Assembly: GCF_001194135.2 (NCBI RefSeq)
Contig: NC_068996.1
Span: 35,599,319-35,645,190, forward strand
Reading direction: 5' to 3'
DNA: 45,872 nucleotides
Source: Octopus bimaculoides
Taxonomy: Eukaryota
The notes beneath the pieces were generated by a model. The model was not told the DNA's origin, did no database searches, and saw only the letters and a list, made by a program, of their open reading frames with translations. Position 1 is the first letter of the stretch. The number at the start of each line of letters is the position of its first letter. The translations under genes were made by a program, and so were the position numbers. Below, piece after piece: positions 9,055 to 44,998 of the stretch.

Positions 9055-9425
9055 TTTCTTTTACTTATTTCAGTCATTTGACTGCAGCCGTGCTGGACCA
9101 CCGCCTTTAGTCGAGCAAATTGACCCCAGAGCTTATTCTTTGTAATTCTAGTACTTATTCAATTGGTCTGTTTTGCCAAACTGCTAAGTTACGGGGACGT
9201 AAAAACACCAGCATTGGTTGTCAAGCGATGTTGGGGGGACAAACACAGACACACAAACATACACACACATACATATATATACATATACGACGGGCTTCTT
9301 CCAGTTTCTGTCTACCAAATCCATTCACAAGGCTTTGGTTGGCCCGAGGCTATAGTAGAAGACACTTGCCCAAGGTGCCATGCAGTGGGACTGAACCCAG
9401 GACCACGTGGTTGGTAAGCAAGCTT
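9052..9425 (-). mobile_element. tRNA-derived SINE family B
   Basis: Head tggttcc/ctgggttcagtcccactg, core gcaccttgggcaagtgtcttctactatagcc, tail agcatggccgcagtcaaatgactgaa. Confidence 0.82.
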
Positions 9426-9528: not shown

Positions 9529-9574
9529 GATAAGACAAGTAGTTTCATGCTTTCTGCAATCTTCAGGTTTATAT
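9529..9574 (-). ncRNA. Type I hammerhead ribozyme core (minimal) in the Penelope 3' tail
   Basis: CTGAAGA-t-TGC agaaa GCA-t-GAAAC tactt GTC. Core is complete; stem I is poorly paired. Confidence 0.7.
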
Positions 9575-10761: not shown

Positions 10762-11305
10762 TTCTTTTACTTGTTTCAGTCATTTGACTGTGGCCATGCT
10801 GGAACACTGCTTTGAATTGTTGTTAGTTGAACAAATCGACACCAGGACTTTTTTAAAGTCTGGCACTTATTTTATTGATCTCTTTTGCTAAACTGCTGAA
10901 CACACAGATCAATAGATACATACATACACATACATACATACATACATACGTACACACATACATACACACATACATACATACATACACATACACACATACA
11001 AATGACAGGCTTCTTTCAGTTTCTGTTTACCAAATCTGCTCACAAGGGTTTGGTTGGCCCAAGGCTATAGTAGAAGACAATTGTTCAAGGTGCAATGCAG
11101 TGGGACTGAACCTGCTTGCATGCATACATACATACATACATACATACATACATACAAATGACAGGCTTCTTTCAGTTTCCATCTACCAAATCCACTCACA
11201 AGGGTTTGGTTGGCCCAGGGCTATAGTAGAAGACATTTGTTCAAAGTGCAATGCAGTGGGACTGAACCTGGAACCATGTGGTTGGGAAGGAAGTTTCTTA
11301 CCACA
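10762..11305 (-). mobile_element. SINE family B with internal ~120-bp tandem duplication, inserted in the Penelope ORF
   Basis: acaaatgacaggcttctttcag...gtgggactgaacctg occurs twice around (TACA)n. Confidence 0.8.
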
Positions 11306-12734
11306 CCACCATGCCAACACCTATAATACTCAAAATATCTTAACACTTTGTTATAAAATTCCTAATAATATTTAATTATGAAAGCAAAAGATTTTAAAAA
11401 ATATTAAATGGTTAGTAGGGCACATCCAAGTAAAATAGGAATAAAAGGGGTTCATAGATGAAAAAAAAAATGGTTGAGGAACACTGTTCTATACCATTTT
11501 CTATAAGTATGGGTGGATGTTTTCATTTGAGTAGAAATCCTTTAACTTCTGTTTCTGGTATCTCTGTGATCAACAATGGCACAAATTTTTCTGGCTAGAC
11601 AGTATGGGATATTATTTTTTGTATATGTTGGGTGGCATGATTTAAAGTTCAGGTACTGATGTGTATCTCTGTCTTTGTAATATACATCATTGGTGATAGT
11701 GGTGTCATTTTTAGTTGCCATTATCTTGAGAAATGGTAATTCTGTGTTGCTCATTTCCTTTTATAGATTTCAGAGTTGGGTGCAGATTGTTCAGGTAAGT
11801 ACTGAATTCTTCCAAGATGTCTAGAAATTTTGTCCAGATTTTGAAACAGTCATCCTGGTATCTCTTCCATGCACCTGAAATATACCTTCTAAAGTCAGTG
11901 CCATAGTTTTCTTCTACTCTTTGATATAGTTATTCTAAGTATTCTATTACTGAGTTCGCATAAACTGGAGCAAACCTGGTTCCCATTGCTGTACCTCTAA
12001 TTTGAAGATAATTCTTCCAATTGAAAAAGAATATATTATTTTCAAATATAAAGGCCATGGTAAATCCACTGGTAATCATTTCTCTTAGTTTTTTCACCCA
12101 ATGTTTAATCACTTTTATTCCTAAATCATGTGGAATATTTGTATAGAAGCTTACTATATCAAAACTAAATACGAATGAATTCAATTCTATTGTTTTGGAA
12201 AGATGGGAACAGGAAGTCAGTGTCATCCTGAATGAAACTTGGTATGTGAGTACATAATGGTTTCAAAATGATGTTAACTAAATTACTTAGATGATCAGGG
12301 CATACTGGACCAGCTATAATAGGTGTAAGTTTTAGCTTTGTTGGTTATAGTAATCTTATATATTCACTTATCTTGTTCCTTCAATTTATGTATTTTTGGT
12401 AAGCCGTAAAAGATGCCGGGTGTGGGCTCAAAATTGTGGGGTGGGGGAGTTATTGGTGATAAGGGAGGTGTAGTGTTGTAGGTTCAAAATTGTGGGTGAT
12501 AAAGTGAGTTGTGTTCTGAAACCAAATTACTGAACTTCATGATGCTGTAATTTAGATTTGAAGGTATTTCACAGTAAAATGTTGCATCCATCAATTGATC
12601 CTCAGCTAAATCTTGGTAATATTCAGCATCTATTGTGACAATAACATTCCCTTTATCTGCTTCTTTTATAACTATTGTGTTACTGTTTTGGAGGTGTTTA
12701 AGCACAGACTTCTCTGGTTTGGTAATATTTGTGA

Positions 12735-16452: not shown

Positions 16453-16519
16453 TGCGGTACACGTGTTTCAAGCTTTATATCAGTGTATAATTGACAATAT
16501 AAAGCTATCTTCAGCCGCA
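16453..16519 (-). ncRNA. Type I hammerhead ribozyme, intact minimal fold
   Basis: TGCGG CTGAAGA t AGCTTTATAT..ATATAAAGCT t GAAA CACGTGT A CCGCA: 5-bp stem I, 10-bp stem II, palindromic stem III, GUA triplet. Confidence 0.9.
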
Positions 16520-17520
16520 AATGTATTCTCTCCCAAGAATTANNNNNNNNNNNNNNNNNNNNNNNNNNNNNNNNNNNNNNNNNNNNNNNNNNNNNNNNNN
16601 NNNNNNNNNNNNNNNNNNNNNNNNNNNNNNNNNNNNNNNNNNNNNNNNNNNNNNNNNNNNNNNNNNNNNNNNNNNNNNNNNNNNNNNNNNNNNNNNNNNN
16701 NNNNNNNNNNNNNNNNNNNNNNNNNNNNNNNNNNNNNNNNNNNNNNNNNNNNNNNNNNNNNNNNNNNNNNNNNNNNNNNNNNNNNNNNNNNNNNNNNNNN
16801 NNNNNNNNNNNNNNNNNNNNNNNNNNNNNNNNNNNNNNNNNNNNNNNNNNNNNNNNNNNNNNNNNNNNNNNNNNNNNNNNNNNNNNNNNNNNNNNNNNNN
16901 NNNNNNNNNNNNNNNNNNNNNNNNNNNNNNNNNNNNNNNNNNNNNNNNNNNNNNNNNNNNNNNNNNNNNNNNNNNNNNNNNNNNNNNNNNNNNNNNNNNN
17001 NNNNNNNNNNNNNNNNNNNNNNNNNNNNNNNNNNNNNNNNNNNNNNNNNNNNNNNNNNNNNNNNNNNNNNNNNNNNNNNNNNNNNNNNNNNNNNNNNNNN
17101 NNNNNNNNNNNNNNNNNNNNNNNNNNNNNNNNNNNNNNNNNNNNNNNNNNNNNNNNNNNNNNNNNNNNNNNNNNNNNNNNNNNNNNNNNNNNNNNNNNNN
17201 NNNNNNNNNNNNNNNNNNNNNNNNNNNNNNNNNNNNNNNNNNNNNNNNNNNNNNNNNNNNNNNNNNNNNNNNNNNNNNNNNNNNNNNNNNNNNNNNNNNN
17301 NNNNNNNNNNNNNNNNNNNNNNNNNNNNNNNNNNNNNNNNNNNNNNNNNNNNNNNNNNNNNNNNNNNNNNNNNNNNNNNNNNNNNNNNNNNNNNNNNNNN
17401 NNNNNNNNNNNNNNNNNNNNNNNNNNNNNNNNNNNNNNNNNNNNNNNNNNNNNNNNNNNNNNNNNNNNNNNNNNNNNNNNNNNNNNNNNNNNNNACACAC
17501 AACGAAAAGAAAAAGAGAAT

Positions 17521-17894
17521 GAAAATTCTTTGACACATCTTTCATTATAAGTTTCCGTACCGTCTCCATTTGCGACGCCAGTGTATGTGAAAATTCTGAA
17601 AGAAAAGCTACATAAAATTTGCGGTTTAGGCATTGAAGAGGCACATCCTCAGAATTGCATCGGAAACCTGCTAATACATTGTGCATCTATTAGACCTTGT
17701 TATGAAAAAGGTCTCATAGATGCACAATGTAATAGCATGTTTTCAATGCAATTCTAAGGAATGCCTCTTCAATGCCTAAAACCGCAAATCTTACGTAAAT
17801 TTTCTTTTAGAACTTTTGTGTAAACTGGTGTTGCAAATGGAGATGCTACATAAACATGTGTAACTTATTATTAAAGATGTGCTAAAGAATTTTC
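17521..17894. repeat. Fold-back element of about 370 bp, 9-nt central loop
   Basis: ggtttaggcattgaagaggca / tgcctcttcaatgcctaaaacc and acattgtgcatctat / atagatgcacaatgt arms around 17699-17707. Confidence 0.9.
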
Positions 17895-18079
17895 TGTGTC
17901 TTCTCTTCATTGGATTATTTAGTCTTCGCCAAACCATATGACAATATAATTGTTGTGAAACTTGGATTTTCTACTCCAGATATATTTCCACACTGGCTTG
18001 GATCCTGACTGTGTGGATAGCCCAGTATTCAGGTTGAGTGCTTCTCTGGAAACACCCCAACTTCACACACCAGGTGACT

Positions 18080-18121
<42 letters not shown>

Positions 18122-18124
<3 letters not shown>

Positions 18125-18430
18125 CTATCATCATCATCATTGTTTAACATCCACTTTCCATGCAGGCATGGGTTGGACAGTTTGACTGAGGTCTGGAGAG
18201 CCAGTGGCCATACGAGGCTCCAATCTGATCTGGCAATGTTTCTACAGGTGGATGCCCTTCCTAACATCAACCACTCCAAGCGTGTAGTGCGTGCTTTTTA
18301 CATGCCACTGGCACGGGCCTAGCATCGATCACATTCGGATAGTGCTTTATGTGCCACTGGCATGGGACCAGTTGTGGTTACTGGCATCAGCCACGTTTGG
18401 ATGGTGCTTTTTATATGGCACCGGCACATG
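18122..18430 (-). mobile_element. RTE LINE 3' end fragment
   Basis: catcatcattgtttaacatccactttccatgc...ggatgcccttcctaac motif. Confidence 0.85.
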
Positions 18431-18504: not shown

Positions 18505-18988
18505 NNNNNNNNNNNNNNNNNNNNNNNNNNNNNNNNNNNNNNNNNNNNNNNNNNNNNNNNNNNNNNNNNNNNNNNNNNNNNNNNNNNNNNNNNNNNNNNN
18601 NNNNNNNNNNNNNNNNNNNNNNNNNNNNNNNNNNNNNNNNNNNNNNNNNNNNNNNNNNNNNNNNNNNNNNNNNNNNNNNNNNNNNNNNNNNNNNNNNNNN
18701 NNNNNNNNNNNNNNNNNNNNNNNNNNNNNNNNNNNNNNNNNNNNNNNNNNNNNNNNNNNNNNNNNNNNNNNNNNNNNNNNNNNNNNNNNNNNNNNNNNNN
18801 NNNNNNNNNNNNNNNNNNNNNNNNNNNNNNNNNNNNNNNNNNNNNNNNNNNNNNNNNNNNNNNNNNNNNNNNNNNNNNNNNNNNNNNNNNNNNNNNNNNN
18901 NNNNNNNNNNNNNNNNNNNNNNNNNNNNNNNNNNNNNNNNNNNNNNNNNNNNNNNNNNNNNNNNNNNNNNNNNNNNNNNNNNNNNNNN

Positions 18989-19043
<55 letters not shown>

Positions 19044-19499
19044 ATATACATATATATACATATATATGTGAAGTATTATTACTGTTTTAAACAGTAATAA
19101 TGAAGTGGCTAGCAAGACTACACGTGGATGTATATTATACCTATACAGATATAATATACAATAATTGAAAGAAAGAAGGGTAAAGATACCACTTTCTAAA
19201 AATCCATCAATCTTACAATAAATATACACACAAGCAATGCAATGAATATTTTAAAAAATAGGCCTACCTTCAAAATGGAATAGGAAAATAGATAATACAT
19301 GTCCTAATATCAATTGGTTTCATACTCTGCAATCATTGGTTGGAAATAGTATTTAACATCTATTTCTAAAATAATAATACTTCACATATTCACATTTTTA
19401 TTGTTTATGATAGTTTCTTTTTAAATGGAGCAGGACGTTTTAAGTTAGAAACAAATGCGTGCTAACATAGTGAATATAATCTTGTATTTTGGGATACTC

Positions 19500-20963
19500 T
19501 CGAATGCCGACCCAACAGAGGGACCAGCTATCCGAATTGACAGTGCCTTGGTAGATAAAGCAATTAAGGGTATGAAGACAGGGAAAGCTCCTGGCTCATC
19601 AGGAATCACCACAGAGATGCTCAAAATATCTGGCAGTGTCGGCTATAGCCTAGTCACCCGTATTGTTAACCAGGTGATACACGAAGGAGTCATACCCAAT
19701 GATTGGTGTAGCAGCACCATAGTCAACAAGTACAAAGGTAAAGGTGATGTATTAGATACAAATAATTACAGAGGTATCAAGCTGTTAGATCAGGTAATGA
19801 AAGTCACGGAGAGGGTCACAGCCCAACTAATTAAGGAGAGAGTCAGTTTAGATGAGATGCAGTTTGGGTTTGTGCCAAGGAAAAGCACCACTGATGCTAT
19901 ATTTCTGGTAAGACAGCTGCACGAGAAATACCTAGCCAAAGATAAACTTCTGTACCTGGCTTTCATTAACATGGAGAAAGCCTTCAACAGGGTCCCCTGA
20001 TCCCTTATCTGGTGGTCAATGAGGAAACTAGGGATAGATGAATGGTTAGTGAGAACTGTGCAAGCCATGTACAGAGATGCTGTCAGTAAGGTGAGAGTAG
20101 GTAGTGAGTATAATGAAGAATTCCGGGTAGAGGTAGGGGTCCACCAAAGTTCAGTCCTCAGCCCCCTCCTATTTATCATAGTCTTTCAGGCAATAACAGA
20201 GGAATTGAAGACAGGATGCCTCTGGGAGCTTCTCTATGCTGATGACCTTGCACTAATTGCTGAGTCACTATCTGAACTAGAGAAGTTTCAGGTGTGGAAG
20301 CAAGGATTAGAATCAAAGGGCCTTAGAGTCAACCTAGCTAAAACCAAAGTCCTAATAAGTAGAAAGGCAGACAAACCACAAATCCCTTCAGGTAGTGGCC
20401 CTGCTCGATCTGTAGAAAAGGCGTAGGTAGAAACTCTATAAGATGTACCCAGTGTAATCTATGGACACATAAGAGGTGCAGCAATATCAAAGGAAGGCTA
20501 ACTGGGAAGATAGTTTTTGTATGCAGCAGATGTTCAGGTGCAATAAACACTGAAAATGTTCAGAGAACAACTTCTGCCACATTCCAAGGAGAGAAACTAC
20601 AAGTTGACAGCTTCCATTACCTAGGTGACCAAGTCAGTAGCTGGGGTGGGTGCTCTGAAAGTGTAGCTACTAGAATAAGAATAGCCTGGGCAAAGTTCAG
20701 AGAGCTCCTACTTCTGCTGGTGACAAAGGGCCTCTTGCTCAGAGTAAAAGGTAGACTGTATGACACATGTGTACGAACATGTTTATTACTGTTGTACGAA
20801 CAGTTTGTGTACGAACTTGTTTATTACAGTTATTTTTTTATTTTAATGCCTGTTCATAGTCCAGAAATCTTTTGTCACACACTAGTAGTCCCAGTAACAC
20901 TTTTCATTTCCATATCTGTTCTTGCTCTACTTACTCCATTCTGTTCTTCTATATGTATATATA

Positions 20964-21001
<38 letters not shown>

Positions 21002-21160
21002 GGAAAATGAACTCCTTCTTCTTGATAATTTGCTCCATCGCAATGAAAACCAGTTAGAAAAAATCTTTATTAAATTATGCTTCCAGTTCAGCATTCTGGC
21101 TTTTTTTCATTTTCCTATTATTTCTCCACGTGCGGTTAACACAACCCCACTATTTACTGA

Positions 21161-25110: not shown

Positions 25111-25384
25111 CCTACTCATATAATTTAGCTTCCAGATCTTTCCATCATGTTTGTCTTAACTCTTCTGATACAAACCTGCCTGAAGCTGCTTCTCATTCTA
25201 TGACATAAACTTCCTGTTTTAATATAATCTTAACAAAAATCTTCCATCAAAATTTTATGTACTAAATACCAGCTTAGTAATGACTAAGGCCATATCCAGC
25301 CTGAATATTCTACTTGTTTTATGTTCTAACTAGCCAGATCCAGCCTATCACATTTACCCTTCAATGCCATTATAAAATATACAA

Positions 25385-29490: not shown

Positions 29491-29853
29491 ATGTCTACTG
29501 AAATATATCTTTCTGGACAGAAAACAAACAAAGAAACTTTTGCTCTACCCTTAAATTCCTGTGCTGTCATATTTGCCATTCACTACTGTCATTTAGAAGG
29601 GGTCATTCTGAACTTTGTGGATGATGAAGTATGCGAAGAACTTCAGATAACTATCACCCATCATGCCTTGCATTCTCTGAACATTAATTTTATAACACAA
29701 AATGCAGTCCCTTCTTTGGTTAATGTCTGCTCCTTACCAGTTCTGGTCACATCTAACAGCAATCTCATCAGATCAGGACTGTGTAATGTCATTCGGCAGA
29801 TTACAATGGTGGCCCATAGTTTGTATCCAAAAGAACATTTCAAGGATTTGCTG
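29491..29853 (+). CDS. GSTCD: GSTCD (glutathione S-transferase C-terminal domain-containing protein), first coding exon, 121 aa
   Basis: MSTEIYLSG...FALPLNSCAVIFAIHYC...VCSLPVLV...RSGLCNVIRQI...FKDLL matches the GSTCD N-terminus as I recall it (human ...CIFPLHTSVTLFLLSYC...CCLPAVV...RAGLAVVLRHII...LLELL). Acceptor tttcag at 29437, phase-0 donor CTG|gtaagt at 29853. Confidence 0.9.
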
Positions 29854-32039: not shown

Positions 32040-32075
32040 GGTTTTCGTGGTGGAAGTCTGAAAGCTTGTGCAGAA
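32040..32075 (+). CDS. GSTCD: GSTCD coding exon (36 nt, GFRGGSLKACAE)
   Basis: tgttttcag|GGT...GAA|gtaagt, phase 0/0. Continues the previous exon and matches the GSTCD motif GFKKTCLKACAE. Confidence 0.9.
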
Positions 32076-32973: not shown

Positions 32974-33008
<35 letters not shown>

Positions 33009-33165
33009 CATACGACGGGCTTCTTTCAGTTTCCGTCTACCAAATCCACTCTCAAGGCTTTGGTCAGTCCAAGGCTATAGAAGACACTTGCCCAAGTTGC
33101 TACGCAGTGGGACTGAACCCGGAACCATGTGGCTGGTAAGCTAGCTACTTACCACACAGTCACTC
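32700..33165 (-). mobile_element. SINE family B with internal 22-bp x4 expansion
   Basis: tattctttgtaagcctagtact x4 (32793-32880). Confidence 0.82.
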
Positions 33166-33419
33166 TTGCACCTTTACTAACAAATTTGCTAGACTCCCTT
33201 CCTCCAATCTTTATTCTCTCTCTTTTTCTCTTCTTTCCATCTCTTCCTTTCTTTTTCTTCTTTTTTCTCCTTTATTGTTTATTTTTATTTTTTCTATCTT
33301 TTTTTTTTACATTGTATATCATGCTTTTTTTTTATCATTATAACTAAAAGCTTCAAATTAAATTAAATTTTTACCTGGAAGCTTTTAAATCTTTCAATAT
33401 ATGAACCTTGTTTTGATCA

Positions 33420-36232: not shown

Positions 36233-36364
36233 ATATATATATATACACACACATATATATACTTTTAGAAGCAGTTGGCTGATTTATTTGTTAAAGCAAC
36301 TGTTTTAAAAACTCGCAGATCTTCTTACTATAAAATAATTTAAGTGTGAATGGTTTTGTGAAAT

Positions 36365-36600
36365 AGTTTGATTCCCAACCACATGGTTCTTGGTTCAGTC
36401 CTGCTGCGTGGTACCTTGGGCAAGTGTCTTCTACTATAACCTCACGCTGACCAAAGTCTTGTGAGAGGATTTGGTAGACAGGCACTGAAAGAAGCCAGTC
36501 ACACATATATACATGTGTGTTTGCCCCCATTACCACTATCACTGCTTGACAACTGGTGCTGGTTTGTTTACAGCCTCGTAATTTAGAATACGTACCAGGT
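36365..36600 (+). mobile_element. SINE family B (right arm of inverted duplication)
   Basis: Shares an idiosyncratic junction (aaacctggtac..taagttacgagg) with the 34790 copy. Confidence 0.8.
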
Positions 36601-39464: not shown

Positions 39465-39526
<62 letters not shown>

Positions 39527-39551
39527 CATCATCATCTCCTTCTTCTTCTAG

Positions 39552-39622
39552 GTGTCCAGTTGGACAAAACTGTGTGAATTAGAATTTCCTGAAGCGATAA
39601 TGTCAGTAATTACTCAAGGGAG
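39552..39622 (+). CDS. GSTCD: GSTCD coding exon (71 nt, VSSWTKLCELEFPEAIMSVITQG+2 nt)
   Basis: tcttcttctag|GTG...GAG|gtaaga, phase 0/2. Matches GSTCD VSQWTRLCELTIPLAI. Confidence 0.87.
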
Positions 39623-40499
39623 GTAAGAATAATTTATGAATTATTGAAAGCCGACATGAAAATGCTGATGTCCCTCACTTACCCATTCATTTGTTTTCCT
39701 TAGAATGAAATTCCAGTGGACCATTTGATTCAACTGACACCTTTTATTTTCAATGTTGTTTTCTAGTTCTTTCATTAAATGAATTTAAATTCATAGCACC
39801 AACATTGGTGTGGTTTTTCAGTCCTCTACAAAACAAAAGAGTCTTTTCTGCTCTTCATTTTCTCCATGTGATACCAATGTGACTAAGTCGGTGAATAGAA
39901 AAAAGAGTGATAACCCAACAGGTGAAGGAAGAGTAAGTAGGAGTATGAAAAGTCAAAACAGTACTAAAAGTAAGAGGATAGTAGGAGAGGGAGTAATGGA
40001 AGAGACACAGTGATAGGCAGTTACATGTTGGTTATTGGTAAAGTTGAATACAAAAACAATGTAGATGACATGATGGAATGGTAATAAAGGAGAGTGATGG
40101 TGACAGAGAGTGATAAAAAAGGGGCATGGGAATGGGAGTAGTAGATGTAGGGAGTACATGAGGTGGACAAAAGAATGATTAGTGGTGCTGAAGGATGATG
40201 GTAGGGGATACTGAATATTGGTCATAACAGATGCCATTCCTTGTTACACAGGTATCATGATGGAAGAAAGGTAAAGTGATAGATGGTGATGATGGACGAC
40301 AAAGTGACAGCAAAGTTACAGTGACATAAACATGCCTACACCAGTTGTTGAGCAGTGGTGGGCAACAAACATGGACACAAAGACACATACACAGATATAT
40401 ACATGATGGACTTCTTTCAGTTTCCATCTAACAAATCCACTCACAGGTAACATAATAAAGTGAATAGAAGAAGGGTAAGTGATGGATGAGAGAATAAGA

Positions 40500-40647
40500 A
40501 ACGGGTCAGTAAAATTTTAACAGCGAGTGACTGGAGCAACATGAAATAAAGTGTCTTGCTCAAGGACACAACACACAGCCCGGTCTGAGTATCGAACTCA
40601 CTACCTCATGATTGTGAGTCTGACACTTTAACCACTGAGCCATACAC
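40500..40647 (-). mobile_element. tRNA-derived SINE related to family C
   Basis: Reverse complement reads tggctcagtggttaaagtgtcagactcacaatcatgaggtagtgagttcgatactc..gtccttgagcaagacact. Confidence 0.75.
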
Positions 40648-40648
40648 C

Positions 40649-40685
<37 letters not shown>

Positions 40686-40686
40686 T

Positions 40687-40733
<47 letters not shown>

Positions 40734-40754
40734 ATACATATATATATATATAAT

Positions 40755-41120
40755 CTTTTTCTTGTTTCAGTCATTAGATTTCCGCCATACTGGGATGAAC
40801 GAATTGATCCCAGTACTTATTCTCTTGCTAAGCCTGGTACTTATTCTATCAGTATCTTTTGTTGAACCACTATGTTACAGGGACATAAACACACCAACAC
40901 CAGTTGTCAAGCAGTGGTGGGTGACAAACATGGACACAAAGACACATACACACATAGATATATATGATGGGCTTCTTTCAGTTTCCATCTACCAAGTTCA
41001 CTCACAAGGCTTTGGTCAGCCTGAGGTTATAGTAGAAGACACTTGCCTAAAGTGCCATGCAGTGGGACTGAACCCAGAAGCATGTGGTTGGGAAATAAGC
41101 TTCTTACCACATAGCCACAC
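40755..41120 (-). mobile_element. SINE family B
   Basis: Family B core and tail in reverse orientation. Confidence 0.8.
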
Positions 41121-41149
41121 CTACACCTAAATATATGTGTGTGTGTCTA

Positions 41150-41162
41150 TATCATCATCATT

Positions 41163-41227
<65 letters not shown>

Positions 41228-41420
41228 TTAACATCTGTTTTCCATGCTGGCATGGGTTGAATGGTTTGACCAGAGCTAGCAAGTAGGAAAGATGCATGAA
41301 GTTCCATTCTGATTTGGCTTGGTTTCCACGCTGGATGCTCTTCCTAATGCCAACTACTATTGGCATTAGCTCTTTATTGGCTGGAAGCTCTTTACATGGT
41401 GCTGGCATGGAAGCCTGTTT
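41150..41420 (-). mobile_element. RTE LINE 3' end fragment with expanded (CAT)n tail
   Basis: tttaacatctgttttccatgctggcatgggttg..ctggatgctcttcctaatgccaac. Confidence 0.75.
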
Positions 41421-41554
41421 TGTGCCACCAACAAAGGGCTCTTGCAGGCAAATCCTCTTCAGCAGGGGTGGTGGTGGTGGTGGTGGGGTAGCACTAACAC
41501 TTCAGCTACGGAGGATGGGTCTTTTTGAATACACCATGGTGCCAAATATCTTAG

Positions 41555-41712
41555 TCAGGCTGGCAGAAATGTTAGCACACCGGGCGAAATGCTTAGCGGT
41601 ATTTTGTCTGTCTTTACGTTCTGAGTTCAAATTCCGCTGAGATTGACTTTGCCTTTCATCCTTTTGGGGTCGATTAAATAAGTACCAGTTACACACTGGG
41701 GTTGATGTAATC
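41555..41712 (+). mobile_element. SINE family A (3' truncated)
   Basis: Same head and core. Confidence 0.8.
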
Positions 41713-42644
41713 TTAGTCCTTTGTCATCCTTCAGTACTTCATCCCATGTCTACACATACATATATGTGTAGTATGTGTTTGTATGTGTGTGCATTTTGTC
41801 TCTGCATGTTTTTGTACTGACACTCCTTGGGCAGCATTTATATTTGTTTATGTTTTGCATAAACAATATGTTCAGCAATTTGGTAGTATAAAGACTTGGA
41901 ATATAGTATCTTATTTTTAAAGTAGCAAGGGTTGGCATCAGTAAGAGAATCCATCTTTCATAAAGCACGACACTCAAAATCCTATGGTATGTTCATTTAA
42001 TTATTTCACTTCTACTGTCAATTAGATTGTGGGCAACATCTATTTTTATATTAATATGGAAGATGTGTGGAGAATTGAGAGAAAAAAAAACACAAGCATT
42101 GTTTTTGTTGTCTATTCTATATGAATACTATAGATTACACAAGATTGTTATGCTATCTCTGAAGATTTGACAATACAATCATAAGATTTTTCCTTATATA
42201 ACTGGAATTTTTCATTGTTAATGAAATGGACGTAAGCTGTTTCACATATATATATATATAGAGAGAGTTTTTCATATTTTCATTGGTTTATTTCATTGGT
42301 TTATTTCATTGGTTTCCAGAATATGAATTGTTTCTTTTTCTCTTTTCCTCTTTTCTTGTCTGAGAAGTTCAGCTGTTTCAAACAGCTACTTAAATACGAA
42401 TAGCTATAGATACACAGGTAGATTTATAATCTACATAGGTTTTTAACCCTCTTGATGGTTGAAAATTGAATAAAATAGAATAAAGTAAAGTAAGATAAAT
42501 AAGATAAGAATGAAGACAAAATTGAAAAAATAAATGAAAATAGATTAAGAATATTTTCCCCTTTCTTTGTCATATGTTTTCCCTATCATCACACCCTATG
42601 ACTAAAGAAAATTGTATGTAATGTGTTAACCCCCATCAGTTTTC

Positions 42645-42710
42645 CAGTCACAACTTACCTGAAGATCCTGTGCACCTTCAGGTGAAACTCATCAGAGTTG
42701 CAAGAGACTG
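42645..42710 (+). ncRNA. Type I hammerhead ribozyme fold with full stem III
   Basis: CTGAAGA (42659-65); stem II CCTG/CAGG; GAAA (42684-87); stem III ACTC-atca-GAGT; GUU triplet; stem I cttac/gcaag plus cagtc/gactg; AATAAA about 10 nt downstream. Confidence 0.75.
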
Positions 42711-42734
42711 ACTCACCTGAAATAAAAATAGGTG

Positions 42735-43038
42735 CAAGCATGGTTGTGTGGTAAGAAGCTTGCTTCTCAACCACATGGTTCTAGATTCAGTCCTACTGTG
42801 TGGAACATTGGGCAAGTGCCTTCTGCTGTATTTTCAGGCTGACCAAAGCATTGTGAGTGGATTTGGTAGGTGGAAACTGAAAGAAGCTCTTCGTATATAC
42901 GTATATATATATATATGTATATATATANNNNNNNNNNNNNNNNNNNNNNNNNNNNNNNNNNNNNNNNNNNNNNNNNNNNNNNNNNNNNNNNNNNNNNNNN
43001 NNNNNNNNNNNNNNNNNNNNNNNNNNNNNNNNNNNNNN

Positions 43039-43072
<34 letters not shown>

Positions 43073-43330
43073 AAAATTCACAAAAAAAAAACAAAAGATG
43101 AAGACAGGTGGTGTAGACAACATATATATATTATCTGTTGGTGGGGTGTCTTTGAGCCTGCATTTGTCCCCTCTACCCACTACTTGGAGGCTTGTGTTGG
43201 TGTGTTTACGTCTGGGTAACTTAGCGGTTCAGCTAAAGTGACCAATAGAATAACTACGGGGTTCATTTCATTTGACTAAAAATTCTTCAGCATGGCCACA
43301 GCCTAATGGCTGAACCAAATAAAAGATAAA
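42735..43330 (+). mobile_element. SINE family B spanning an assembly gap
   Basis: Head at 42735-42890, tail at 43140-43330. Confidence 0.65.
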
Positions 43331-43769
43331 AGGTATAAAACTCTACCATGGTATTGAGTACTCTTTCTTTTTCTGATAGTTAATGCTAAACATATACATA
43401 CTTACATGCCTAGATGTACACATACATTTGGTGTGTACACTTTTGTGTGTGTGTATGTATGTATGCGTGTGTGTGTATGTATGTATGCATGTGTGTGTGT
43501 GTGTGTGTGCACGTGTGTGCTTGTATCAGTTGGTCAGATAGCAAGCTGTGCTATTTAGTTTTACTAAACACAGTATTGACATGTTGCACAATAGACTTAA
43601 CACCTGGAGAAATATTGATCCCATGGCAGATATCACTGGGATCAATATTGCCATGAGAGACATGTGAATCATTGTTAAGTTGTGTACCTTTAAGCATGTA
43701 ACTTATTTCCATTTTTTATTCATGTAAGTTATATGCTATATACAATTGAGGCAGTATCTAATAAAAATT

Positions 43770-44562: not shown

Positions 44563-44998
44563 AGGCGTGGCTGTGTGGTAAGAAGCTTGCTTCCCATCTA
44601 CATGCTTCTGGGTTCAGTCCACTGCATGGCACCTTGGTCAAGTGTCTTCTACTACAGCCTCAGGTCGACCAAAGCCTTGTGAGTAGATTTGGTAGACAGA
44701 AACTGAAAGAAGCCCATTGTGGTATCTATCTATCTATCTATCTATCTATATATATATATATATATATATTTATGTATGTGTGTCTTTGTGTCTGTGTTTG
44801 TCCCCTCACCTTTGCTTGACAAGTGATGTTGGTGTGTTTATCTCCCTGTAACTTAGCAGTTTGGCAAAAGAAACTGACAGAATAAGTACTAGGCCTATAA
44901 AGAATAAATCCTGGGGTCGACTTCTTTGACCAAAAGCCTTTAAGGTGGTGCTCCAGCATGCCCACAGTCAAATGACTGAAACATGTAAAAGAATAAAA
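44563..44998 (+). mobile_element. SINE family B, full length
   Basis: ggcgtggctgtgtggtaagaagcttgcttccc...aaatgactgaaacatg. Confidence 0.85.

What the first reader, a model, noticed from the sequence alone, without database searches (positions are those of the whole stretch)
42645..42710. Complete, monomer-competent hammerhead ribozyme fold, sense strand, in a putative GSTCD intron, with a built-in competing hairpin
Seen: the conserved core nucleotides are present (C3-A9 = CTGAAGA at 42659-65, GAAA at 42684-87, U16.1 plus H17 = GUU). Stem II is CCTG/CAGG, stem III is a true 4-bp ACTC/GAGT with a tetraloop, and stem I is bipartite with an internal loop. Predicted cleavage is after 42699, and AATAAA follows at about 42720. 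A perfect 8-bp alternative hairpin, ACCTGAAG(42657-64)/CTTCAGGT(42676-83), would sequester the core, suggesting a two-state switch. Known: Penelope-associated hammerheads usually have a minimal stem III that needs dimerisation, and intronic hammerheads exist in amniote genes such as RECK. Inference: this could self-cleave GSTCD pre-mRNA co-transcriptionally. No Penelope ORF is visible nearby, and its location inside GSTCD assumes the gene continues downstream.
Basis: partly seen in the sequence, partly recalled or inferred. Interest (0 to 1): 0.85.

Follow-up and report, generated by a model that had tools for sequence, protein, structure and literature searches.

The report
Chance hammerhead look-alike in octopus intron
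A 66-base stretch inside an intron of an octopus GSTCD gene can be drawn as a hammerhead ribozyme, but it is missing from the same intron in Octopus vulgaris, matches no ribozyme model and is predicted to fold as a plain hairpin, so it is most likely a coincidence.

Summary
"Complete" overstates it. Stem II starts with a U-U mismatch, which is a known tolerated variant. Stem I has a C-A mismatch next to the cleavage site. The competing hairpin is 10 bp, not 8.

The gene context holds. Exons 1-3 of a GSTCD orthologue lie on the + strand, and the site sits in intron 3, sense strand.

Function is not supported:
- No Rfam hammerhead family matches, even at E<=10.
- A model built from four experimentally active animal hammerheads gives 9.7 bits (E=1.4); seven other places in the window score higher.
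- The site is single-copy in the window and not in a tandem repeat or recognisable Penelope-like element.
- The hammerhead fold costs 12.5 kcal/mol over the best fold, against 3.1-7.6 for the real controls.
- The roughly 1.9-kb segment that carries it has no counterpart in the orthologous O. vulgaris intron, whose flanks align at 84-89%.
- Motifs of this quality are expected about 0.001-0.002 times per window, so roughly 100 times in a genome of about 2.7 Gb.

Verdict: a chance look-alike. A residual chance of weak, lineage-specific cleavage remains. A better hammerhead-like motif lies at 16458-16514 on the minus strand.

The parts
42645..42710 (+).
   Evidence: Sequence read; pairs listed; only hit of the fitted descriptor in the window
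42659..42665 (+). CUGAAGA, which fits core positions C3-A9 (N7 = A)
   Evidence: one of 35 CTGANGA heptamers in the window counting both strands
42666..42683 (+). Stem II hairpin: U42666 x U42683 mismatch at 10.1/11.1, then CCUG/CAGG (4 bp) and an 8-nt loop
   Evidence: pairing probability about 0 in the unconstrained ensemble
42684..42699 (+). GAAA (G12-A15.1), stem III ACUC/GAGU with loop AUCA, U16.1, and H17 = U42699 (notional cleavage after 42699)
   Evidence: the stem III hairpin is predicted to form (p about 0.9)
42655..42685 (+). Competing 10-bp hairpin (42655-64 / 42676-85, 11-nt loop) that buries CUGAAG and the G and first A of GAAA; it is the predicted dominant fold
   Evidence: MFE -22.1 kcal/mol against -9.6 for the hammerhead drawing; forms once position 42683 is transcribed; p = 0.65-0.77 in a 266-nt context
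41035..42927 (.). Segment between two conserved anchors that has no counterpart in the orthologous O. vulgaris intron. It contains repeats (41193-41358, 41550-41725), 1 kb of sequence that is single-copy in the window (41726-42727, holding the motif) and a SINE-like repeat
42728..42927 (+). SINE-like interspersed repeat (at least 10 copies in the window at 72-80% identity) ending in (TA)n and an assembly gap. The AATAAA at 42721-26 lies just before its 5' edge
   Evidence: ARAGORN finds no tRNA in it
29491..29853 (+). GSTCD exon 1 (ATG to the donor CTG|GTAAGT)
   Evidence: 94% aa identity to O. vulgaris P0050 and 61% to Argonauta hians GSTCD; family named
32040..32075 (+). GSTCD exon 2 (GFRGGSLKACAE), flanked by AG and GTAAGT
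39552..39622 (+). GSTCD exon 3, flanked by AG and GTAAGA; intron 3 runs from 39623 past the end of the window
   Evidence: In O. vulgaris exon 4 lies 11 kb downstream of exon 3, and the window end corresponds to L003 22908

Best explanation
The motif is a coincidental hammerhead-like arrangement of letters in non-conserved, repeat-rich sequence of GSTCD intron 3 of an Octopus species. It is transcribed as part of the pre-mRNA because it lies in an intron on the sense strand; that step is inferred from gene structure. The RNA most likely folds into a plain 10-bp hairpin (42655-64 / 42676-85) followed by the small stem III hairpin. It is then removed and degraded with the intron, with no self-cleavage of biological consequence. 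The competing hairpin is an ordinary short inverted repeat, not an evolved switch. Part of the hammerhead resemblance comes from that inverted repeat: its 5' arm supplies CUGAAG and its 3' arm supplies CAGG.
For: (1) No Rfam family reaches threshold in the window. No hammerhead family appears even at E<=10 on 161 or 70 bases. The motif at 16458-16514(-) does draw a weak hammerhead-family match in the same mode. (2) A covariance model built from four experimentally active animal type-I hammerheads (sequences from PMC7229834, Suppl. Table 2) gives 9.7 bits and E=1.4 over the window. (3) Orthology: flanking intron aligns to O. vulgaris at 84-89%, but window 41035-42927 has no similarity to the corresponding interval L003 19258-20377 or to anything else in the 64-kb locus. 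L003 has neither the descriptor hit nor the inverted repeat. (4) The site is single-copy in the window, with no tandem array and no homology to the other hammerhead-like sites. (5) Energetics: the hammerhead-compatible fold lies 12.5 kcal/mol above the MFE (ensemble fraction 2.7e-10). The four real controls, computed the same way, give 3.1-7.6 kcal/mol and 2e-6 to 1e-3. The competing hairpin forms before stem III and the 3' strand of stem I are transcribed. (6) Chance rate is 1.4-2.0e-8 per base, or about 70-110 such motifs in an assumed 2.7-Gb genome. A review warns that relaxed hammerhead descriptors mostly return false positives (PMC6155905).
Against: All 11 core nucleotides, the A15.1-U16.1 pair and an allowed H17 are present, and about 0.001-0.002 such motifs are expected per window. 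The U10.1-U11.1 mismatch is a documented natural variant that retains activity (PMC3088659; axolotl HHR_Amex2 in PMC7229834). Nearest-neighbour folding also fails to predict the active fold for real hammerheads: the controls have helices with p close to 0. The energy argument is therefore relative, not absolute. The Rfam models and my model are dominated by hammerheads with a short stem III and may under-score one with a 4-bp stem III. Only one other species could be compared, so a young lineage-specific element is not excluded. Cleavage was not assayed.
Confidence: 0.8

Rival explanations
1. It is a catalytically competent, lineage-specific hammerhead. It arose recently, by chance or by insertion, and cleaves a fraction of GSTCD pre-mRNA in this Octopus lineage. 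The 10-bp hairpin acts as a brake that some factor or kinetic window relieves.
For: The core is consensus-compatible, stem III is 4 bp and H17 = U. The U-U mismatch is tolerated in natural ribozymes (PMC3088659, PMC7229834). The site is on the sense strand in an intron. About 0.001-0.002 such motifs are expected per window. Real hammerheads are also poorly predicted by MFE folding.
Against: It is absent from the O. vulgaris orthologous intron. No hammerhead model supports it. Its energy penalty is about 5 kcal/mol larger than the worst real control. There is a C-A mismatch at 1.2-2.2 next to the cleavage site, and only one G-C pair before it. No loop I/loop II signature is recognisable.
Confidence: 0.12
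2. It is a decayed relic of a retroelement-borne type-I hammerhead (Penelope-like element or retrozyme) that inserted into the intron and has since lost its partner copies and activity.
For: Type-I topology is the animal retroelement type (PMC4209133, PMC7229834). The segment is lineage-specific and sits among transposon fragments. The window holds a better hammerhead-like motif at 16458-16514(-) that shares CUGAAGA-U...U-GAAAC. The O. vulgaris locus holds a relic-like site.
Against: There is no homology to those sites beyond the core letters. There is no tandem repeat, pseudo-LTR or reverse-transcriptase/GIY-YIG reading frame nearby. Stem III is long and not palindromic, unlike animal retroelement hammerheads. 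The G10.1-C11.1 pair typical of those families is missing (PMC4209133).
Confidence: 0.06
3. The functional unit, if any, is the 10-bp hairpin itself (a protein-binding or editing substrate), and the hammerhead resemblance is incidental.
For: The hairpin is the dominant predicted structure; the 77-nt fold has z = -2.2 against shuffles.
Against: Seventy-two comparable perfect 8-bp inverted repeats occur in the window. It is absent from O. vulgaris. From general knowledge, 10 bp is too short for known double-stranded-RNA editing or microRNA processing substrates.
Confidence: 0.02

Closest known systems
Canonical animal type-I hammerheads of retrozymes and Penelope-like elements (e.g. coral Amil224, mussel Mg353, axolotl HHR_Amex1/2; Rfam Hammerhead_1)
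   Same: Type-I topology. CUGANGA...GAAA core, A15.1-U16.1 pair and H17. A 4-bp stem II. A U-U mismatch at the base of stem II, as in axolotl HHR_Amex2 (PMC7229834).
   Different: Those occur in hundreds to about 100,000 copies, in tandem repeats or pseudo-LTRs. They have a contiguous 6-bp stem I, usually G10.1-C11.1, and a short palindromic stem III (PMC4209133, PMC7229834). This site is single-copy in the window. Its stem I is interrupted by a C-A mismatch, its stem III is non-palindromic and 4 bp, and it scores 9.7 bits on a model of those ribozymes.
Domesticated intronic hammerheads of amniotes (HH9/HH10, e.g. in RECK; PMC6155905)
   Same: An isolated motif on the sense strand in an intron of a protein-coding gene.
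   Different: Those are defined by deep conservation of sequence and position across birds, reptiles and mammals, and by canonical loop-loop contacts. This one is already absent in a congeneric species whose flanking intron is 84-89% identical.
False-positive hammerhead-like motifs from relaxed pattern searches (discussed in PMC6155905)
   Same: Core letters plus minimal stems found by pattern. No family, no conservation, no model support. The rate is compatible with chance at genome scale.
   Different: None found; this is the category the evidence favours.

Membership tests
Hammerhead ribozyme (any type) | Conserved core: C3 U4 G5 A6 N7 G8 A9, G12 A13 A14, the A15.1-U16.1 pair, and H17 (not G) | tested here: met
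   CUGAAGA 42659-65, GAAA 42684-87, A42687-U42698, U42699
Hammerhead ribozyme (any type) | A 10.1-11.1 base pair closing stem II; it is usually G-C and is the most conserved pair after 15.1-16.1 | tested here: not met
   U42666 x U42683. U-U is the best-tolerated mismatch and occurs in natural active variants (PMC3088659, PMC7229834), so this weakens the case without excluding it
Hammerhead ribozyme (any type) | Three helices that actually form around the core | tested here: inconclusive
   The helices can be drawn, but stems I and II have p about 0 and the hammerhead fold lies 12.5 kcal/mol above the MFE. Four real controls give 3.1-7.6 kcal/mol and also show some unpredicted helices
Hammerhead ribozyme (any type) | Match to curated covariance models (Rfam hammerhead families) | tested here: not met
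   No hit at gathering score. No hammerhead family at E<=10 on 161 or 70 bases
Hammerhead ribozyme (any type) | Site-specific self-cleavage | not testable with these tools
   Needs in vitro transcription and a cleavage assay
Hammerhead ribozyme (any type) | Loop I / loop II tertiary contacts that give activity at physiological Mg2+ | not testable with these tools
   Loop II (UGCACCUU) and the stem I internal loop show no resemblance to the control loops in alignment A1, but contacts cannot be judged from sequence alone
Animal retroelement type-I hammerheads (retrozyme / Penelope-like) | Similarity to validated members: 6-bp stem I, short palindromic stem III | tested here: not met
   Model R1 built from coral, mussel and two axolotl ribozymes gives 9.7 bits, E=1.4, rank 8 in the window, in a different register
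Animal retroelement type-I hammerheads (retrozyme / Penelope-like) | Multi-copy context: tandem repeats of 150-450 bp, or pseudo-LTRs flanking an RT/GIY-YIG reading frame | tested here: not met
   41726-42727 has no other copy in the window. No tandem array. The RT fragments in the window are elsewhere and one sits beside an endonuclease-reverse transcriptase domain match. Genome-wide copy number could not be checked
Domesticated intronic hammerheads (amniote HH9/HH10 type) | Conservation of the motif at the orthologous intron position in related species | tested here: not met
   The O. vulgaris GSTCD intron 3 lacks the segment, the motif and the inverted repeat, while its flanks align at 84-89%

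The most novel reading that the evidence does not exclude
A very young, lineage-specific, monomeric hammerhead with a U-U base in stem II and a built-in inhibitory hairpin, which self-cleaves GSTCD pre-mRNA in one Octopus lineage. It would be an example of a gene-embedded ribozyme caught at birth.
Probability: 0.04. Interest if true: 0.6.

Novelty: not a real feature. Interest (0 to 1): 0.12.

Why it matters
If real, this would be a protostome counterpart of the amniote intronic hammerheads, and a rare isolated, monomer-type ribozyme inside a host gene with an intrinsic on/off structure. The evidence points the other way, and the case is useful mainly as a calibration. A full consensus core with drawable stems turns up by chance about once per several hundred windows of this size. 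Nearest-neighbour folding alone cannot confirm or refute a hammerhead, because the real controls also look unfavourable. Here the orthologous-locus comparison was the most informative computational test.

Tried and rejected
- **Orthologous DNA through spurious reading frames.** The two minus-strand ORFs over the site are not on record. A chimeric six-frame query of 41.7-42.7 kb against 5.8 billion proteins found nothing.
- **Exact-pattern scan of metagenome contigs** for the core and stems: 0 hits. This was expected and carries little weight.
- **Argonauta hians GSTCD locus (L002).** The gene is intronless there, so no orthologous intron exists to compare.
- **Related-species contig L001.** It covers exon 1 only.
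- **Minus-strand readings.** CUGAUGAG at 42687-42694 has no GAAA partner in hammerhead register. The weak C/D-box snoRNA matches (E = 3-9) are not significant and lie antisense to the host gene.
- **An absolute thermodynamic argument** ("ensemble fraction 1e-8, so inactive"). I dropped it after controls showed that active ribozymes give 2e-6 to 1e-3. Only the relative gap is used.
- **The U-U mismatch as disqualifying.** Rejected after reading PMC3088659 and PMC7229834.
- **A Penelope-like endonuclease upstream of the 16.5-kb motif.** Pfam finds nothing, even at E<=10.
- **Homology between the candidate and the other hammerhead-like sites.** There is none beyond the core letters.

Full report
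**What is in the sequence**

The stretch 42645-42710 (+) reads CCAGUCACAACUUAC-CUGAAGA-U-CCUG-UGCACCUU-CAGG-U-GAAA-CUC-AUCA-GAG-U-U-GCAAGAGACUGA.
- CUGAAGA at 42659-65.
- GAAA at 42684-87.
- Stem II: CCUG/CAGG.
- Stem III: A87-U98, C88-G97, U89-A96, C90-G95, with loop AUCA.
- U16.1 at 42698 and H17 = U42699.
- A two-part stem I.
- AATAAA at 42721-26.

Three details were left out:
- U42666 and U42683 separate the core from stem II, so the 10.1-11.1 pair is a U-U mismatch.
- The second pair of stem I, next to the cleavage site, is a C-A mismatch.
- The competing hairpin is 10 bp (42655-64 / 42676-85), not 8, and it is the minimum-energy structure.

**Is it more than chance?**

A descriptor fitted to this motif allows the 10.1/11.1 mismatch and one mismatch in the first five pairs of stem I. 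It finds only this site in the window, and a strict descriptor finds none.

In 800 Mb of random sequence with the window's trinucleotide statistics the relaxed descriptor hit 11 times. A planted-core estimate gave 2.0e-8 per base. That is 0.0012-0.0017 per window and about 70-110 in a genome of about 2.7 Gb; the genome size is my assumption.

The motif is therefore notable within one window, but many are expected per genome, and the descriptor was fitted after the fact. AATAAA occurs 55 times on the + strand. Non-periodic perfect 8-bp inverted repeats with short spacers occur 72 times. Neither adds anything.

**Gene context**

The reading frame at 29491 is the N-terminus of a GSTCD orthologue:
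- It is 61% identical to Argonauta hians GSTCD over 124 residues. That protein carries GST_C and Methyltransf_32 domains.
- It is 94% identical to the O. vulgaris protein P0050.

Exons 1-3 lie at 29491-29853, 32040-32075 and 39552-39622 and have canonical AG/GT borders. In the O. vulgaris locus L003, exon 4 lies 11 kb beyond exon 3. The window's end corresponds to L003 22908, which is still inside intron 3.

From 42728 a SINE-like repeat begins, with at least 10 copies in the window. The stretch 41726-42727 has no other copy in the window.

**Model-based tests**

Rfam gives no hit at gathering score in the whole window. No hammerhead family appears at E<=10 when only 161 or 70 bases are searched.

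I built a covariance model from four animal type-I hammerheads whose self-cleavage was shown experimentally: coral, mussel and two from axolotl. The sequences come from Supplementary Table 2 of PMC7229834. Against that model the candidate scores 9.7 bits with E=1.4 over the window.

Both kinds of model are dominated by ribozymes with a short stem III, so this is evidence against membership of the known animal families. It is not proof of inactivity.

**Folding**

The hammerhead drawing has -9.6 kcal/mol against -22.1 for the MFE. In growing transcripts the 10-bp hairpin forms once 42683 is made, before stem III and the 3' strand of stem I exist.

I first read this as decisive, then ran controls. 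The four real ribozymes, treated identically, also sit 3.1-7.6 kcal/mol above their MFE, with ensemble fractions of 2e-6 to 1e-3. Some of their helices are predicted with p close to 0.

The candidate's penalty is 12.5 kcal/mol (fraction 2.7e-10). It is worse than every control by about 5 kcal/mol or more. The argument is relative only.

**The U-U mismatch**

The literature shows that it is not disqualifying. Perreault et al. report natural hammerheads whose stem II starts with U10.1-U11.1, and note that this mismatch supports more activity than any other (PMC3088659). About 60,000 axolotl HHR_Amex2 motifs carry it and cleave weakly as monomers (PMC7229834). G10.1-C11.1 remains highly conserved in Penelope-type hammerheads (PMC4209133).

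The O. vulgaris GSTCD locus (L003, 64 kb) aligns collinearly with the window:

| Window | L003 | Identity |
|---|---|---|
| 39496-40696 | 17093-18258 | 88.8% |
| 40653-41034 | 18905-19258 | 84% |
| 43041-43767 | 20377-21109 | 86.5% |

Between the last two anchors the window has 41035-42927 plus an assembly gap, and O. vulgaris has 1.1 kb at 19258-20377. The two intervals share no detectable similarity (blastn, word size 7, E<=0.1). The window segment matches nothing else in L003. L003 contains no descriptor hit, no copy of the inverted repeat and no Rfam hit.

So the segment carrying the motif was either inserted in this lineage or lost in O. vulgaris. Either way the motif is not a conserved feature of the intron. 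Only this one species could be compared.

**Conclusion**

The best-supported reading is a coincidental hammerhead look-alike in non-conserved intron sequence, folding as an ordinary hairpin (confidence about 0.8). The rivals are:
- A weakly active, lineage-specific ribozyme (0.12).
- A decayed retroelement hammerhead (0.06).
- A functional hairpin (0.02).

Cleavage itself was not tested, so the first rival cannot be excluded.

**Side observations**

The same scans turned up a more convincing hammerhead-like motif at 16458-16514 on the minus strand:
- Stem I is 6/6 pairs (UUGCGG/CCGCAG).
- The core is CUGAAGA, followed by a U-U mismatch and a 12-bp stem II.
- GAAACACGUGUA is the same 12-mer as in the axolotl Ax353 ribozyme.
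- A (TA)n tract lies about 60 nt downstream, and an assembly gap lies 29 nt upstream.

Its chance rate is about 5e-5 per window. Rfam gives it a weak RAGATH-1-hammerhead match of 12.1 bits, E=9.

Two further partial look-alikes lack a stem I: window 9530-9572 (-) and L003 25295-25333 (-), the latter at 25.7 bits on my model.

Noticed in passing
window 16458-16514 (minus strand): A better type-I hammerhead-like motif. Stem I is 6/6 bp (UUGCGG/CCGCAG). The core is CUGAAGA, followed by a U-U mismatch and a 12-bp stem II. GAAACACGUGUA is the same 12-mer as in the axolotl Ax353 ribozyme, with H17 = A. A (TA)n tract lies about 60 nt downstream; an assembly gap lies 29 nt upstream, and an endonuclease-reverse transcriptase ORF about 108 nt downstream. 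Chance rate is about 5e-5 per window. It scores 12.9 bits on my model (local alignment) and 12.1 bits on Rfam RAGATH-1-hammerhead (E=9). No Penelope-type endonuclease could be shown upstream.
   Followed up: partly
window 9530-9572 (minus strand): The best hit of the hammerhead model in the window (17.9 bits, E=0.0045). It has CUGAAGA, a U-U mismatch, a 3-bp stem II with loop AGAAA, and GAAAC...GUC, but no proper stem I. It shares only a 10-mer with the candidate.
   Followed up: partly
L003 25295-25333 (minus strand; O. vulgaris GSTCD intron 3, antisense): UUGAUGAGGUCUAAAAGACUGAAACAUGUC scores 25.7 bits (E=2.7e-5) on the model and closely resembles axolotl Ax330. It has U in place of C3 and no stem I, so it may be a decayed retroelement hammerhead. 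Rfam lists no hammerhead there. A sub-threshold Twister-P5 match (17.9 bits, E=0.09) lies next to it at 25237-25276.
   Followed up: partly
L002 5001-7091 (Argonauta hians): The annotated A. hians GSTCD coding sequence is one uninterrupted 2091-nt reading frame. The Octopus gene has at least 13 coding exons over 44 kb. The Argonauta copy may be a retrogene or an annotation artefact.
   Followed up: no
window 42653-42661: ACTTACCTG on the + strand is the reverse complement of the consensus 5' splice site CAG|GTAAGT, so a perfect donor consensus lies on the minus strand inside the motif. From general knowledge, the same 9-mer matches the 5' end of U1 snRNA. A given 9-mer is expected about 0.3 times in the window by chance (my rough estimate).
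   Followed up: no
window 42728-42927, with copies at 40946-41129, 11124-11324, 44565-44756, 9259-9425, 32992-33173, 36350-36495 and others: An abundant SINE-like repeat of about 190 bp (72-80% identity between copies) that ends in (TA)n. Several assembly gaps follow such microsatellites. ARAGORN finds no intact tRNA in the copy at 42728.
   Followed up: partly
L003 19431-19950 and 19645-20294: The O. vulgaris sequence that occupies the position of the candidate-bearing segment contains direct repeats (219 bp at 92% identity, 87 bp at 91%). This suggests a different transposon insertion at the same place.
   Followed up: no
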